Source of the DNA: Octopus bimaculoides
Lineage: Eukaryota
Direction: 5' to 3'
Length of the DNA stretch: 39,519 bases
Assembly: GCF_001194135.2 (NCBI RefSeq)
Contig: NC_068984.1
Span: forward strand, 143,678,817-143,718,335
The notes below the pieces were generated by a model. That model worked only from the letters and a program-made list of their open reading frames with translations. It did no database searches and was not told the DNA's origin. Below, piece by piece: positions 4,484-37,600 of the stretch. The translations under genes were made by a program, and so were the position numbers. Each line of letters begins with the position of its first letter. Position 1 is the first letter of the stretch.

Positions 4484-4632
4484 CTGGTGGTGGTGGTGGT
4501 GGTGGCGGCGCGATGGTCGTAGTGGTCATGGTGGTGGTGGCGCGATGGTCGTGGTGGTGCTGGTGGTGGTGGTGGTCGTCGTCGTCGTAGTTGTTGTGGT
4601 CGTCGTAGTTGTTGTGGTCGTCGTGGTGGTAG
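4484..4632. repeat. Compound (GGT)n/(CGT)n/(GTT)n trinucleotide tract
   Basis: Direct reading. Confidence 0.9.
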
Positions 4633-4698
4633 TAGAATCTAGTCTCACAAACAGCAGTATCATTTGCAAATATAAAACAATCTTGGTATAAAACTTAC

Positions 4699-4743
4699 CA
4701 ACGGTGGCCAGACTGGCTCGTGAACCGGATGAGCCTCTCCAAG
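4699..4743 (-). CDS. Candidate 45-nt internal exon of an unidentified minus-strand gene
   Basis: Minus strand reads ttctactccttcttcccAG|CTTGGAGAGG...CCACCGTTG|GTAAGT: strong acceptor, consensus donor, length divisible by 3, open in all frames (phase-1 frame WRGSSGSRASLATV). No homology recognised. Confidence 0.45.
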
Positions 4744-4759
4744 CTGGGAAGAAGGAGTA

Positions 4760-5153
4760 GAATTTGTACCTGTAATTATAGAGGCATTAGGGTATGTAAC
4801 CAACTACCTCAATCTGTTGAGAAATTAGACTTCTCAAAACCAGAAAGGAGAAAGTTAAGTAGATTACAAACACAAGGCATCAATAGAACGGTCAAAATCT
4901 GTAAAGCTTTCCAAAAGTTCAGCATATAGGCATATATGCACATGTCTAGACGTGTAACGATATGTATGACAATATATTCATAAACGAAAATGTACAGATC
5001 TACACATGCACTGACTCCAAATACTTGCACACACACACACACACACGCATACACTGTTGAAGTTTAAATTCCAATGGAGATTTGAATCTAGGTTAGAAGC
5101 TGGCTCTTTCTTCATTCGTAAGGTATCTCGAAGAAAATACTAAACGATAGCAC
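4760..5153 (+). mobile_element. 5'-truncated R4/Dong-like (RLE-type) non-LTR retrotransposon 3' end, copy 1
   Basis: Frameshifted EFVPVIIEALGYVTNYL / QSVEKLDFSKPERRKLSRLQTQGINRTVKICKAFQKFSI* (stop 4927-4929), homologous to the C-terminus of copy 2; the 3' UTR runs into (ACAT)n at 5154. Confidence 0.75.
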
Positions 5154-5180
5154 ACATACATACATACATACATACATACA

Positions 5181-5800
5181 TACCTATGCAGCACGATGTT
5201 GTTGCTAAAACAATTTACGATGCCATCCGCAAGAAAGACTGTCGTGAAATAAACTTAGAAAATTCTTCTGTTATAGAATACATTCATAAACACCAACTCA
5301 AGGAATACTGGTGGAATATTGCCATCGAAACTTCTGTCAAATGTAAACATAACAGACCAGATATTGTTGTTTGGGACAGAGGGACAAAGATATGCGTCAT
5401 CATAGAGGTCAGCTGCCCTGCAGATATAAATGTCTCTTTGAAAATATAAACAAGAAAAGAGGATGGCTATGGACAACTTCTTTGAAACCTCCAGCTTCTA
5501 TATCCAGACTATGAATTCATATTCATACCAATAATAATTGGAGCGCTAAGTTTTGTTAGTAAATGCTTAAAGGAGAATCTGGATAAACTGGGATTTTCAG
5601 AAAGAGAAATTGACCAGTTAATTCGTACATTACAAGTCCAATCTGTGAGTGGGACATAGTAAAAATATGCAAGACTTTTCTCAAGTTCCAAATGTGAATT
5701 TTTCTGTGTTAACTACATCCCAAAGACGGAGCCTTGTATCTTTGTTGGAAACCGGCTCCCTCCTCAGCGGAAGATTTATAATAATTAAAAAATAGAAGAG
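5181..5800 (+). mobile_element. 5'-truncated R4/Dong-like non-LTR retrotransposon with restriction-like endonuclease domain, copy 2
   Basis: MQHDVVAKTIY (end of the CCHC knuckle region), HNRPDIVVWD..C.IIEVSCPAD (PD-(D/E)xK core), K...Y..L, FIPIIIGAL, ending KICKTFLKFQM* (stop 5695-5697); disrupted by in-frame stops and a frameshift; flanked by (ACAT)n on both sides. Confidence 0.88.
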
Positions 5801-5882
5801 ACATACATACATACATACATGCATACATTCAGATTACAAACATACATACATCTCTTTAAATACATACTTATATACATACATA

Positions 5883-10430: not shown

Positions 10431-10694
10431 GCGACGATGATGATGATGATAATGATCGTCCATTTTTTTTATTTGACACAAGGGTGAAGGGTGAGGGGGC
10501 ATTGCAAGTGCAACTACATAAATATTTGGAGCTTTACATAGAATCGAGAAGAAAAAGAACAACAACAAGGGCAAAAATAAGACAAACATAGAGACAGACA
10601 GACAGACAGACAGACTGACAGACAGACAGATAGGTAGGTAGGTAGGTAGGTAGGTAGGTAGGTAGGTAGGTAGACAAACAGCTAGCTGGCTGGC

Positions 10695-10770
<76 letters not shown>

Positions 10771-10790
10771 CAGACGGATAGATAGATATG
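9466..10790. repeat. Trinucleotide (CAT/ATT/ACT/GAT)n and tetranucleotide (GACA/GGTA/GATA)n arrays
   Basis: Arrays at about 9466-9570, 9670-9722, 10129-10159, 10382-10452 and 10590-10790, with intervening (TC)n-rich sequence. Confidence 0.93.
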
Positions 10791-11202: not shown

Positions 11203-11610
11203 TTATTCTTTTGCTTGTTTCAGCCATTGGACTGCGGCCATGCTGGGGCACCGCCTTGAAGAATTTTTAGTCCAATGAATCGAAACCAACGCTTATGTTC
11301 TCTTTTGTTTTTGTTTCCTTGTTTTTGTTTTTTTTAAGCCTGGTACTTATTCTATTGTTCATATTTGCCGAGCTGCTAAGTTACGGAGACATAAACACAC
11401 CAGCATCGGTTGTCAAGCGGTGAAGGATACAAACACACACACACACACACATATGGGCTTCTTTTCAGTTTCCGTCAACCAAATCCACTGCCAAGGCTTT
11501 GGTCAGCCCGAGGCTATAATAGAAGGCACTTGCCCAAGGTGCCATACAATGGGACTGAACTTGAATGCATGTGGTTGGGAAGCAAGCTTCTTACCACACA
11601 GCCACTCCTG
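11203..11610 (-). mobile_element. SINE family A, full length (tRNA-derived head, CORE-like CCTTGGGCAAGT segment, internal (TG)n)
   Basis: Minus strand starts CAGGAGTGGCTGTGTGGTAAGAAGC (A box), has a decayed B box and ends GCAGTCCAATGGCTGAAACAAGCAAAAGAATAAAA; homologous to six other copies in the window. Confidence 0.9.
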
Positions 11611-17038: not shown

Positions 17039-17395
17039 GGGCAGCGTGGTTGTGTCGTAAGAAGCCTGTGTGCTAAGAACGACATGGTTCTGGGTTCAGT
17101 TCCACTGCGTGGCAGCTTGGGCAAGTGTTTTCTGCTATAGCTCCGGGTCGACCAATGCGATGTGAGTGGATTTGGTAGGCGGAAACTTAAAGAAGCTCGT
17201 CGTATACATATATGTGTGTGTGTATGTGTGTGCTTGTCCCTCCACCATCGCTTGACAACTGATGTTGGCGTGTTTACGTCCGCGTAGTTTAGCGGTTCGG
17301 CAAAAGTGTCCGATAGAATAAGTACCAAGCTTACAAAGAATAAGACATTGGGGTCAGTCAAAAATGACAGAAAAAAGTCAATGAAATAAATGAAT
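17039..17395 (+). mobile_element. SINE family A with internal 3' deletion
   Basis: Head GCGTGGTTGTGTCGTAAGAAGC, B box GGGTTCAGTTCC, CTTGGGCAAGT and central (TG)n; the GGGGTC...CAGTCAAA segment is collapsed. Confidence 0.9.
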
Positions 17396-20681: not shown

Positions 20682-20910
20682 TTCTATTGGACTCTTTTGC
20701 CGAATCGCTAAGTTACGGGGACGTAAAGACACCAACATCGGTTGTCAAACGATGGTAGGGACAAACACAGACAAACATAGACATAAATAAATATATATGG
20801 ATATACGACGGGCTTCTTTCAGTTTCCGTCTACCAAATCTACTAACAAAGCTTTGGTCGGCCCGAGGCTATAGTAGAAGACGCTTGCCCAAAGTGAACCC
20901 GGAACCATGT
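20682..20910 (-). mobile_element. SINE family A, partial, with internal deletion
   Basis: Aligns to family A from the B box to ACCGATAGAAT-like sequence; about 18 nt are missing between the B box and TTGGGCAAG; the 5' end runs into a gap. Confidence 0.88.
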
Positions 20911-22922: not shown

Positions 22923-23460
22923 ATTTTATTCTTTTGTTTCATTCATTTGACTGTGGCCATACTGGAGAACTGCATTCAAGGGTTATCTTAGTCGAAGAAA
23001 TCGACCCCAGGACTTATTCTTTGTAAGCCTAGCACTTATCCTATCGTTCCNNNNNNNNNNNNNNNNNNNNNNNNNNNNNNNNNNNNNNNNNNNNNNNNNN
23101 NNNNNNNNNNNNNNNNNNNNNNNNNNNNNNNNNNNNNNNNNNNNNNNNNNNNNNNNNNNNNNNNNNNNNNNNNNNNNNNNNNNNNNNNNNNNNNNNNNNN
23201 NNNNNNNNNNNNNNNNNNNNNNNNNNNNNNNNNNNNNNNNNNNNNNNNNNNNNNNNNNGATACAGAGAGAGAGAGAGAGGGAGAGAGAGAGAGAGAGACG
23301 ACAGGCTTCTTTCAGTTTCCGTCTACCAGATCCACACACAAGGCTTTGGTCGGCCTGAGGCTATAGTAGAAGTCACTTGCCCAAGGTGCCACGCAGTGGG
23401 AATGAACCCGGAACCATGTAGTTGGGAAGCAAGCTTCTGCCACACAGCCACGCCTGCGCC
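22923..23460 (-). mobile_element. SINE family A, full length, spanning a gap
   Basis: 5' part 23296-23460 begins GGCGCAGGCGTGGCTGTGTGGCAGAAGC and 3' part is 22923-23050; the central microsatellite here is (TC)n. Confidence 0.88.
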
Positions 23461-24490
23461 TATATGCATACATACATACATACACACATACATACATACA
23501 TAATACATACATACATACATAATACATACATACATACATACATGCATGCGTACATATAAATACACGTTCACGAGCAGATGGGTACACAAAACTTAGTGTA
23601 AATATAGCGACATACACAAGACATATTCACAATCATGCATGCAATTATGCGCATTTCTGCATAGACACACACACAAATACGTATAGACATACACACACAC
23701 GTGTATACGTACAAACACACACACACAAATATACGTATAGGCACATACACGCAAATACATAAAGATACACACGACCTATACACACACACACATACACACA
23801 CAAGTGCAATCTCATACACGCACACTTAAATATCATACATTCATGTACGTAGAGATCGACAGAAACATTTCACATACACAGAGAATGACACACAACGATC
23901 GAGGCGTTCGCAGGCGCAAACGCACATACCTTTCAGCACACAACACCGCACCAACTCTATCTCTTCACAACTTCACCAACATACCAAGTTGCCAAGACAA
24001 TACTACAGCATTAAGCAATCACTAAAGCAGAACACTACAACACTGCTATACACTACGCCTCTTCAGTGCTGTGCATAACAATTCGTATTTACATCAGTAC
24101 ACTAATAAAATACTAGCACCAATACAACAACACCACTTTGCCTCACCGATGCAGCAACACACAACCACAAGTAATTCACACCATACTAACGAGCCAAGAA
24201 GTGGGGACTCCACACGGTCGATTGACCTACTAAAAACAGCAGCTGACATCAACCAAAATTGGCCTCAATTCAGATCGTAGTTAGTCTTAAACATGAATGA
24301 TAACGCCAGCACTGTGTCATAGCACCGTGACTAAATACAGACTCCACCGTTCACTTAGTCTGGAAATCTTTCTGGGAGACAATATCTCGTTAAGGAATTG
24401 TTATCTTATACGTGACAACGTAGATGGTGGTGGTGTTGGTGTTGGTGGTGGTGGTGTTGGTGGTGGTGGTGGTGGTGGTGGTGGTGGTGG
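23461..24490. repeat. (TACA)n/(CA)n field, decayed CA-rich sequence and (GGT)n
   Basis: Direct reading. Confidence 0.85.
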
Positions 24491-37209: not shown

Positions 37210-37600
37210 CACGGAGTGGCTGTGTGGTAAGTAGCTTGCTTGCCAACCACATGGTTCCGGGTTCAGTCTTCAGTCCCAGTGCGTGGTACCTTGGGCAAGT
37301 GTCTTCTACTATAGCCTCGGGCCGACCAAAGCCTTGAGTGGATTTGGTAGACGGAAACTGACAGAAGCCTGTCGTATATGTGTGTGTGTGTGTGTGTGTT
37401 TATGTGTCCTTCCTACCATCGCTTGACAACAGATGCTGGTAAGTTTACGTCCCCGTAGCTGAGCGATTCGACAAAAGAAACCGATAGAATAAGTATGAGG
37501 CTTACAAAGAATAAGTCCTGGGGTCGATTTGTTCGACTAAAGGCGGTGCTCCCGCATGGCCGCAGTCAAATGACTGAAACAAATGAAAGACTAAAAGAAT
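37210..37600 (+). mobile_element. SINE family A, full length
   Basis: GGAGTGGCTGTGTGGTAAGTAGC head, B box carrying a 7-nt duplication (TTCAGTC twice), CCTTGGGCAAGT, central (TG)n, A-rich tail running into (TA)n. Confidence 0.93.

What the first reader, a model, noticed from the sequence alone, without database searches (positions are those of the whole stretch)
4760..5882. Two different R4/Dong-like retrotransposons stacked head-to-tail in (ACAT)n: candidate tetranucleotide-targeting RLE system
Seen: copy 1 ends in (ACAT)n (5154-5183), copy 2 starts inside that run with TAC microhomology (..ACATAC-CTATGCAG) and itself ends in (ACAT)n (from 5801). Their C-termini are homologous but clearly diverged, so this is not a tandem duplication. 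Established: R4-clade elements use a PD-(D/E)xK endonuclease and can be target-specific (silkworm Dong inserts in (TAA)n). Inference: this lineage cleaves (ACAT)n/(ATGT)n, subfamilies pile up at the same target, and the process may feed the many TACA arrays in this window.
Basis: partly seen in the sequence, partly recalled or inferred. Interest (0 to 1): 0.8.

Follow-up and report, generated by a model that had tools for sequence, protein, structure and literature searches.

The report
Octopus LINEs that target ACAT repeats
Two dead, independently inserted fragments of a LINE retrotransposon that carries a restriction-like endonuclease lie head to tail in an (ACAT)n microsatellite. Relatives elsewhere show that this lineage inserts into that repeat, which is a new target for an already known kind of site-specific jumping gene.

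Summary
Window 4760-5153 and 5184-5800 are two 5'-truncated, decayed 3' ends of LINEs that encode a restriction-like endonuclease (RLE). Each ends in (ACAT)n, and the second starts inside the first one's ACAT run. They share 49% protein identity over 57 aa and no detectable DNA similarity, so they are not a duplication.

Related copies support targeting. Of five ACAT-type copies with a readable 5' junction, four have (ACAT)n directly upstream on the same strand. These include a clean Octopus vulgaris copy and two full-length elements with no upstream element. A sister group does the same with (ACTT)n and forms pile-ups of up to six copies. More distant relatives sit in (TAA)n, as Dong does.

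All share a covarying 3'UTR hairpin about 40-70 nt before the tail.

Three side claims are not supported:
- Copy 1's own 5' flank has no ACAT.
- The "TAC microhomology" is 1 nt.
- The window's other ACAT arrays show no recognisable element remnant.

The R4 versus HERO clade question could not be resolved. Sequence-specific cleavage was not tested.

Verdict: a new member (new target) of the known class of microsatellite-specific RLE LINEs. Moderately interesting.

The parts
4760..4929 (+). Copy 1: remnant of the ORF C-terminus (last 57 aa), with a frameshift near 4800-4812 and the stop codon at 4927-4929
   Evidence: tblastn against P0001/P0002/P0003. Alignment A1. Coordinates. DNA similarity to the copy-1-like contig L009 begins at 4762.
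4930..5153 (+). Copy 1 3'UTR. It is CA-rich, as in the related contig L009.
5076..5107 (+). Copy 1 3'UTR hairpin (outer stem, UU bulge, inner stem, loop)
   Evidence: Covariance model R1 gives 26.9 bits, E 9.5e-6.
5154..5183 (+). (ACAT)7.5, perfect. It is the tail of copy 1 and the 5' flank (target remnant) of copy 2.
   Evidence: TRF. Junctions.
5184..5697 (+). Copy 2: remnant of the ORF C-terminus holding the RLE domain (RHD, NRPD, E, K..Y, IIGAL). It starts just after the CCHC knuckle. Stops at 5447 and 5483, frameshift near 5657, ORF stop at 5695-5697.
   Evidence: It is 79% DNA identity to L011 and 74% to the O. vulgaris copy.
5698..5800 (+). Copy 2 3'UTR
5728..5759 (+). Copy 2 3'UTR hairpin: GGAGCC-UU-GUAUCU-UUGUU-GGAAAC-C-GGCUCC
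   Evidence: R1 gives 40.6 bits, E 2.7e-10. The MFE fold recovers it. Covariation.
5801..5882 (+). (ACAT)n, decaying. It is the tail of copy 2 plus whatever remains of the target array.
   Evidence: TRF. Sequence.

Best explanation
The region holds two old, 5'-truncated, non-functional insertions from two subfamilies of one LINE lineage. The lineage has a single ORF with a reverse transcriptase, a CCHC knuckle and an R2-like restriction-like endonuclease. It integrates specifically into (ACAT)n microsatellites in one orientation.

Proposed mechanism. Only the anatomy is shown; the steps are inferred from R2 and other site-specific LINEs.
1. The protein binds its own RNA through the conserved 3'UTR hairpin.
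2. The endonuclease nicks the (ATGT)n strand of an ACAT array.
3. The freed ...ATGT-3'OH pairs with the (ACAU)n tail of the RNA and primes reverse transcription.
4. The cDNA is often incomplete, which gives 5' truncation, and is joined upstream within the array or with loss of it.

Every insertion brings a fresh ACAT tail, which is itself a target. Later insertions therefore stack head to tail, as copy 2 does in or next to copy 1's tail.
For: Protein:
- Copy 2 carries the RHD...(R/K)PD...E...K..Y...GALG domain, shared by thousands of proteins (6051 hits at E<=1e-3).
- Full-length members are 1069-1225 aa with RVT_1 and zf-RVT.
- The best solved relatives are R2 proteins, both for the RT (E 1e-21) and, colinearly, for the CCHC and nuclease end.

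Target, ACAT-type copies:
- O. vulgaris L002: (CATA)21 directly 5' of a truncated copy, with no element upstream.
- L008: full-length 4418 nt between (CATA)103 and (CATA)26.
- L012: intact 1158-aa ORF between (ACAT)13 and (CATA)n.
- Window copy 2.
- Tails alone are seen in window copy 1, L010 and L013.

Sister lineage with (ACTT)n:
- Eight independent junctions, all in the same orientation. Seven adjoin (ACTT)n and one adjoins the (CTGA)n variant.
- Pile-ups of 2 to 6 copies.

Other evidence:
- More distant relatives lie between (TAA)n arrays in L002 and L003.
- Repeat type follows the C-terminal tree.
- The 3'UTR hairpin is 77% paired against 28-48% when the partners are slid. Ten of 12 pairs show double-sided changes, and 0 of 500 shuffles reach the score. 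Held-out copies are found at E 1e-4 and 4e-6.
Against: - Copy 1's 5' flank (4640-4759) has no ACAT, and no homology extends upstream of 4760.
- L003f abuts (CTGA)n rather than (ACTT)n.
- L006's 5' side is not a microsatellite, although that scaffold looks chimeric.
- Only five ACAT-type 5' junctions could be read, and only two of them are from octopus.
- No empty site, no polymorphic insertion and no biochemical test is available.
- The junction register is not strictly fixed.
Confidence: 0.8

Rival explanations
1. Tail only. (ACAT)n is merely the templated or slippage-generated 3' tail of the family, as in many CR1/L2-type LINEs. Insertion sites are essentially random, and the stacking in the window is coincidence.
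For: Copy 1 has ACAT only at its 3' end. L006 and L013 show only a 3' tail within their contigs.
Against: Long same-strand arrays lie directly 5' of copies that have no upstream element: L002 (CATA)21, L008 (CATA)103, L012 (ACAT)13, L001A (TACT)59 and L007a. ACAT runs cover under 1-2% of the sequence, so 4 of 5 exact adjacencies cannot be chance.
Confidence: 0.07
2. The outcome is the same, but specificity is set mainly by base pairing between the RNA's tetranucleotide tail and the nicked DNA. The endonuclease and DNA-binding parts would have little sequence preference. A change of tail (ACAT to ACTT) would then retarget the element.
For: Closely branching clades use ACAT or ACTT while keeping the same 3'UTR hairpin architecture. 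The tail and the flank are always the same repeat on the same strand. Full-length members have no N-terminal zinc finger or recognisable Myb.
Against: Repeat type is stable within clades that differ by 50-65% in protein sequence, which fits protein-encoded specificity equally well. In R2, target choice is made by protein-DNA contacts (established knowledge). A conserved N-terminal three-helix domain exists and could bind DNA. Nothing here separates the two mechanisms.
Confidence: 0.25
3. The two window copies arose by duplication or unequal crossing-over of a single insertion.
For: Such tandem duplicates do occur in relatives: L007b=c and L007e=f have identical truncation points and identical arrays.
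Against: The window copies share no DNA similarity. They are 49% identical in protein. Their truncation points and 3'UTRs differ (224-nt CA-rich against 103 nt). Each is closer to a different outside sequence: copy 1 to P0003/L009, copy 2 to P0001/L011.
Confidence: 0.01
4. Passive accumulation. Insertions are random but survive preferentially in repeat-rich, low-recombination DNA, so they end up near microsatellites. This has been proposed for Drosophila Waldo-A/B near CA repeats (PMC3812793).
For: The window is extremely rich in simple repeats (105 TRF rows in 39.5 kb).
Against: The junctions are exact, with no spacer. The repeat is always the family's own tetranucleotide and always on the same strand, although many other microsatellite types surround the copies.
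Confidence: 0.03

Closest known systems
Dong (R4 clade): (TAA)n-specific RLE LINE of Bombyx, Anopheles and the snail Biomphalaria (PMC3812793, PMC4640811)
   Same: Single-ORF LINE with RT and a C-terminal CCHC plus PD-(D/E)xK nuclease. It inserts into a microsatellite and ends in the same repeat. It occurs in molluscs. (TAA)n-flanked relatives of the present family lie in L002 and L003. Octopus repeat annotations list abundant 'Dong-R4' LINEs of about 4.2 kb (PMC13282606).
   Different: The target here is a tetranucleotide, (ACAT)n, or (ACTT)n in the sister group. The (TAA)n-flanked relatives are only 20-26% identical in the C-terminal domain. Membership of the R4 clade by RT phylogeny was not tested.
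HERO clade families with microsatellite specificity (leech Helobdella; Kapitonov & Jurka, Repbase Reports 2014, cited in PMC4640811)
   Same: RLE LINE in a lophotrochozoan that targets microsatellites.
   Different: I could not reach the sequences or the target repeat of those families, so identity with them, or distance from them, is unknown.
Waldo (R1 clade): (ACAY)n-specific LINEs of mosquito and earwig (PMC3812793)
   Same: Essentially the same target repeat (ACAT is an ACAY), with orientation-specific insertion.
   Different: Waldo uses an apurinic-like endonuclease at the N-terminus. The present family has an R2-like RLE at the C-terminus and no APE domain. The resemblance is convergent.
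R2 (28S rDNA-specific RLE LINE, solved structures 8gh6, 9nl3, 9dou)
   Same: Closest solved proteins (RT E 1e-21). The C-terminal profile aligns colinearly: C..C...H...C, RH, KPD, D/E, K..KY, GA.G. Both have a single ORF and a structured 3'UTR that the protein presumably binds.
   Different: The target is a microsatellite, not rDNA. No N-terminal zinc finger or recognisable Myb was found. The element has a tetranucleotide tail.
Togen (NeSL-related, (TG)n-specific, fish; PMC4640811)
   Same: RLE LINE specific for a microsatellite.
   Different: The target is a dinucleotide and the clade is different. No comparison of sequences was possible.

Membership tests
RLE-encoding non-LTR retrotransposons (R2 group) | C-terminal PD-(D/E)xK restriction-like endonuclease homologous to that of R2 | tested here: met
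   Copy 2 has ...RHD...NRPD...IIEV...K..(K)..Y...IIGAL. These columns are invariant in the family. The profile's best PDB hits are the R2 C-termini, aligned colinearly, though weakly (E 0.055).
RLE-encoding non-LTR retrotransposons (R2 group) | Non-LTR reverse transcriptase in the same ORF, upstream of a CCHC knuckle | tested here: met
   Both are absent from the two truncated window copies. They are present in family members: RVT_1 and zf-RVT in proteins of 1069-1225 aa, P0186 against R2 RT at E 1e-21, and an RT fragment in the O. vulgaris copy.
Microsatellite-specific (target-specific) LINEs | The same repeat on both sides of independent insertions, on the same strand, with exact junctions | tested here: met
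   ACAT type: 4 of 5 evaluable copies. ACTT type: 7 of 8, plus one with the (CTGA)n variant. In five loci the outermost array has no element upstream (L002, L008, L012, L001A, L007a).
Microsatellite-specific (target-specific) LINEs | Empty (pre-insertion) sites that are uninterrupted arrays; sequence-specific nicking | not testable with these tools
   No octopus genome could be searched by similarity, and there is no biochemistry.
R4 clade (R4 / Dong / Rex6) | Placement within the R4 clade in an RT phylogeny with reference elements | not testable with these tools
   No R4, Dong or HERO reference sequences were reachable. The OCR'd alignment in the supplement of PMC7650587 lacks them.
Dong | (TAA)n target and tail | tested here: not met
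   The window copies and their clade use (ACAT)n. (TAA)n-flanked copies are a separate, distant branch.
HERO clade | Placement within HERO in an RT phylogeny | not testable with these tools
   Same reason as for R4.
Waldo (R1 clade) | N-terminal apurinic-like endonuclease | tested here: not met
   No Exo_endo_phos domain in full-length members. They have an RLE instead.

The most novel reading that the evidence does not exclude
This widespread animal RLE-LINE superfamily may choose its target mainly by pairing between a 4-nt-repeat RNA tail and the nicked microsatellite. The conserved 3'UTR hairpin would act as the protein handle. A simple change of tail (ACAT to ACTT, and locally ACAG or ACTG variants) would then retarget the element. 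That would make it a naturally RNA-programmable target-primed reverse transcription system whose insertions also create new targets and so build head-to-tail arrays.
Probability: 0.2. Interest if true: 0.7.

Novelty: new member of a known kind. Interest (0 to 1): 0.4.

Why it matters
Site-specific RLE LINEs (R2 and its relatives) are the models for target-primed reverse transcription and are now being engineered for gene insertion. A lineage that targets a tetranucleotide repeat, has switched to another tetranucleotide at least once and keeps a compact covarying 3'UTR hairpin gives a natural comparison set. It can be used to ask what sets target choice: protein, RNA tail or both.

For cephalopod genomics it offers a possible explanation for why 'Dong-R4'-type LINEs, reported as the most numerous recently active LINEs in Octopus vulgaris (PMC13282606), can be abundant without hitting genes. 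Whether those annotated families are this lineage was not checked. It also shows that such elements break up and rebuild ACAT arrays. It does not change the known picture of how such elements work.

Tried and rejected
1. SINE partner. One SINE copy (23300-23466) is followed by (CATA)n and its end loosely resembles the LINE hairpin. The other five copies have unrelated 3' flanks. Rejected.

2. Further element remnants at the window's other ACAT arrays. tblastn, blastn at word size 7 and the covariance model with filters off found only the two known copies.

3. Clade assignment. Database hits are unnamed. The only supplement that cites R4 and HERO reference sequences is an OCR'd figure that lacks their RT blocks. 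Abandoned.

4. N-terminal domain as a Myb-like DNA binder. A conserved three-helix domain is predicted (pLDDT 77). Foldseek against the PDB gives nothing below E 2, and the sequence profile gives only chance hits. Left open.

5. Extension of copy 1 upstream of 4760. No protein or DNA homology was found.

6. Pfam on copy 2 alone. Only a sub-threshold HSDR_N_2 hit, another PD-(D/E)xK fold. Not used as evidence.

7. (ACTG)n as a separate specificity. In L007 it is an internal variant within ACTT arrays between duplicated copies, so it is not counted as a separate target.

Full report
WHAT IS THERE. The window is very rich in simple repeats (105 TRF rows). It is probably from an octopus. The only named protein hit is an Octopus vulgaris hypothetical protein. 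A SINE in the window is 91% identical to one in an O. vulgaris locus.

Translating 4640-5830 shows two stretches on the + strand that resemble the C-terminus of one protein family.

Copy 2 (5184-5800) reads MQHDVVAK...KHNRPDIVVWD...IIEVSCPAD...IIGALSFV...GTVKICKTFLKFQM*. It has two in-frame stops (5447, 5483) and one frameshift (about 5657). The ORF stop is at 5695-5697, a 103-nt 3'UTR follows, and then (ACAT)n at 5801-5882.

Copy 1 (4760-5153) keeps only the last 57 residues, EFVPVIIEALGYV...RTVKICKAFQKFSI*. It has a frameshift near 4800-4812 and its stop at 4927-4929. A 224-nt CA-rich 3'UTR follows, and then a perfect (ACAT)7.5 at 5154-5183.

Copy 2 begins at the last unit of that run. Both copies match the family significantly: copy 2 at E 3e-74 and copy 1 at E 9e-8 against P0001 (alignment A1). 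The two copies are 49% identical over 57 aa and have no DNA similarity at word size 7.

Each is closer to a different outside sequence. Copy 1 is closest to P0003 and its contig L009, which has the same CA-rich 3'UTR. Copy 2 is closest to P0001/L011, at 79% DNA identity. They are therefore two insertions from two subfamilies, not a duplication.

WHAT THE PROTEIN IS. An exhaustive profile search found 6051 related proteins at E<=1e-3. Full-length members are 1069-1225 aa. They carry RVT_1 and, after it, the zf-RVT knuckle, and no endonuclease of the apurinic type.

The closest solved structures are R2 retrotransposon proteins, matched through the RT (E 1e-21). A profile of the C-terminal domain also finds the R2 C-termini first. 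The score is weak (E 0.055), but the alignment is colinear over C..C...H...C, RH, KPD, (D/E), K..KY and GA.G.

This is an R2-like restriction-like endonuclease (RLE) LINE. Copy 2 retains the RHD, RPD, E and K columns, which are invariant in the family.

I could not decide between the R4/Dong and HERO clades. The one supplement that cites reference elements does not hold their sequences.

Octopus repeat annotations list 'Dong-R4' as the most numerous recently active LINE class in O. vulgaris: 5 families and 1129 insertions, about 4.2 kb each (PMC13282606). That size fits the full-length relatives found here (4035-4418 nt). It is not a test.

IS (ACAT)n A TARGET OR ONLY A TAIL? I fetched the DNA around relatives and read both junctions.

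ACAT-type copies:
- O. vulgaris L002: a 1.6-kb truncated copy starts directly after (CATA)21 (...ACATAC|TTATATG). Nothing resembling an element 3' end lies upstream of that array.
- L008: a full-length 4418-nt element lies between (CATA)103 and (CATA)26.
- L012: an element with an intact 1158-aa ORF lies between (AT)n(ACAT)13 and (CATA)n.
- Window copy 2 lies between two ACAT runs.
- Window copy 1 has ACAT at the 3' end only.
- L010 and L013 show the tail, but their contigs do not reach the 5' end.

So 4 of 5 evaluable copies have the repeat exactly at the 5' junction, on the same strand as the tail. ACAT runs occupy about 1-2% of the local sequence.

A sister group behaves the same way with (ACTT)n. 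It gives eight independent junctions in L001, L003 and L007. One of them is against a (CTGA)n variant of the array. It forms pile-ups of two, two and six copies in one orientation. Some of those copies are secondary tandem duplicates.

More distant relatives, 20-26% identical in this domain, lie between (TAA)n arrays in O. vulgaris and in L003, which is the Dong pattern.

In a neighbour-joining tree of the C-terminal domain the repeat type follows the clades:
- An ACAT pair (L008, L013) branches first, with 100% support.
- The crown group (100%) holds the octopus ACAT clade (96%) with L012, together with the ACTT clades.
- The TAA copy lies outside.

ACAT is therefore probably the older state and ACTT a later switch.

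A CONSERVED RNA ELEMENT. About 40-70 nt before the tail, all these elements carry a hairpin of fixed design: outer stem, UU bulge, inner stem, loop (often UUGUU), a C bulge on the return strand. The stems differ between lineages while staying complementary:
- Copy 2: outer GGAGCC/GGCTCC.
- L008: outer ACTATTCT/AGAATAGT, inner GAATCTC/GAGATTC.
- L005: outer TGCC/GGCA, inner GCTTCC/GGAAGC.
- L007: outer GGTC/GACC, inner GATCTT/AAGATC.

On a MAFFT alignment of 12 copies, 77% of cells pair, against 28-48% when the partners are slid. Ten of 12 pairs show changes on both sides, and no shuffle of 500 reaches the covariation score.

A covariance model built from that alignment finds the hairpin in two copies that were not used to build it: L010 at E 1e-4 and L012 at E 4e-6. 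In the window plus L002 it finds only the three known copies.

HOW IT MOST LIKELY WORKS. This is inferred by analogy with R2 and other site-specific LINEs.
1. The protein binds its RNA at the hairpin.
2. It nicks the ATGT strand of an ACAT array.
3. The 3' end of the nick pairs with the ACAU tail and primes reverse transcription.
4. The cDNA is often incomplete, and its 5' end is joined within the array or with loss of upstream array.

Loss of upstream array would account for copy 1's non-ACAT flank. Each insertion adds a new ACAT tail that can be hit again, which explains head-to-tail stacks.

The upstream and downstream repeat phases differ by 2 nt in window copy 2 and L008. This would fit a 2-bp staggered cut, as in R2, but two junctions are too few to count.

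What reads the target cannot be told from these data. Full-length proteins have no N-terminal zinc finger. They do share a conserved N-terminal three-helix domain that matches no solved fold or sequence.

WHAT IS NOT SUPPORTED.
- The 'TAC microhomology' at copy 2's 5' junction is a 1-nt overlap when the junction is aligned to three family members.
- The idea that the process feeds the window's other ACAT arrays has no support here. None of those arrays has a coding remnant, DNA similarity or a hairpin next to it. Very old remnants could of course have decayed.

COMPARISON AND NOVELTY. Microsatellite-specific LINEs are an established class (PMC3812793, PMC4640811):
- Dong, (TAA)n, RLE type, including a snail family.
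- Some HERO families in a leech.
- Togen, (TG)n.
- Among APE-type elements, Waldo (ACAY)n, Mino (AC)n, Kibi (TC)n and Koshi (TTC)n.

The present lineage works like Dong but targets a tetranucleotide. That tetranucleotide is in effect Waldo's target, reached with a different nuclease.

I found no paper that reports ACAT or ACTT targeting by an RLE LINE, or any target specificity for cephalopod 'Dong-R4' elements. Repbase Reports are outside the library, so prior deposition cannot be excluded.

I class it as a new member of a known kind, of moderate interest. The target switch and the compact covarying hairpin are the parts most worth following.

Noticed in passing
L002 3446-4277 (minus strand); L003 16800-19839: A more distant RLE-LINE copy (20-31% identity in the nuclease domain) lies between two (TAA)n-type arrays. 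One is in Octopus vulgaris and one is in the unknown organism of L003. This is the classical Dong arrangement.
   Followed up: partly
L007 5482-20810: Six head-to-tail copies sit in one (ACTT)n array. Two pairs (b=c, e=f) share truncation points and array composition. Pile-ups therefore also grow by unequal crossing-over between the microsatellite spacers. (ACTG)n and (TACC)n variants have expanded inside the arrays.
   Followed up: partly
L006 1-210; protein P0011: Eukaryotic LINE sequence appears in 'bacterial' records. The scaffold L006 joins an intact element to what reads, by my own inspection and not by a search, like a bacterial nuoH N-terminus. P0011 is named as a protein of a Pseudomonadota MAG. 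These look like chimeric or contaminated assemblies.
   Followed up: no
window 23300-23466, 37213-37373 (-), 11456-11610, 17044-17196 (-), 20807-20895; L002 19889-20053 (-): Five copies of an octopus SINE (80-89% identical to the 23300-23466 copy; 91% to an O. vulgaris copy). On the strand used as the query, four of the six copies have CA-rich runs on their upstream side. The true orientation may therefore be the reverse, with a (TG)n-type tail. This SINE is not a partner of the ACAT LINE.
   Followed up: partly
L002 6100-7080: Several copies of another SINE-like repeat in the O. vulgaris locus are followed by ATT/ATC-rich runs. That is the repeat type of the Dong-like (TAA)n elements, so this is a possible LINE-SINE partnership.
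   Followed up: no
window 10580-10788; L010 974-1028: The window holds an (AGAC)13(AGAT)42 compound array. A close relative of copy 2 (L010) has a tail that changes from (ACAT)2 to (ACAG)n. No element remnant was found next to the window array.
   Followed up: partly
window 4485-4630: An imperfect (TGG)n / 32-nt repeat block lies about 130 nt upstream of copy 1. Its nature (coding on either strand, or a plain minisatellite) was not examined.
   Followed up: no
window about 20823-20900 and 23150-23254: Runs of N (assembly gaps) lie next to a SINE and next to a (GA)n/ACAT region, so some repeat arrays in this window are incompletely assembled.
   Followed up: no
full-length relatives P0186, P0187, P0188, P0194, P0123 (N-terminal 25-85 aa): A conserved N-terminal motif, W.YEL..D...CY......GY..R.K..W...HP.......L..Q, is predicted as a three-helix domain. 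It has no match among solved structures. It is a candidate nucleic-acid-binding module of these LINEs.
   Followed up: partly
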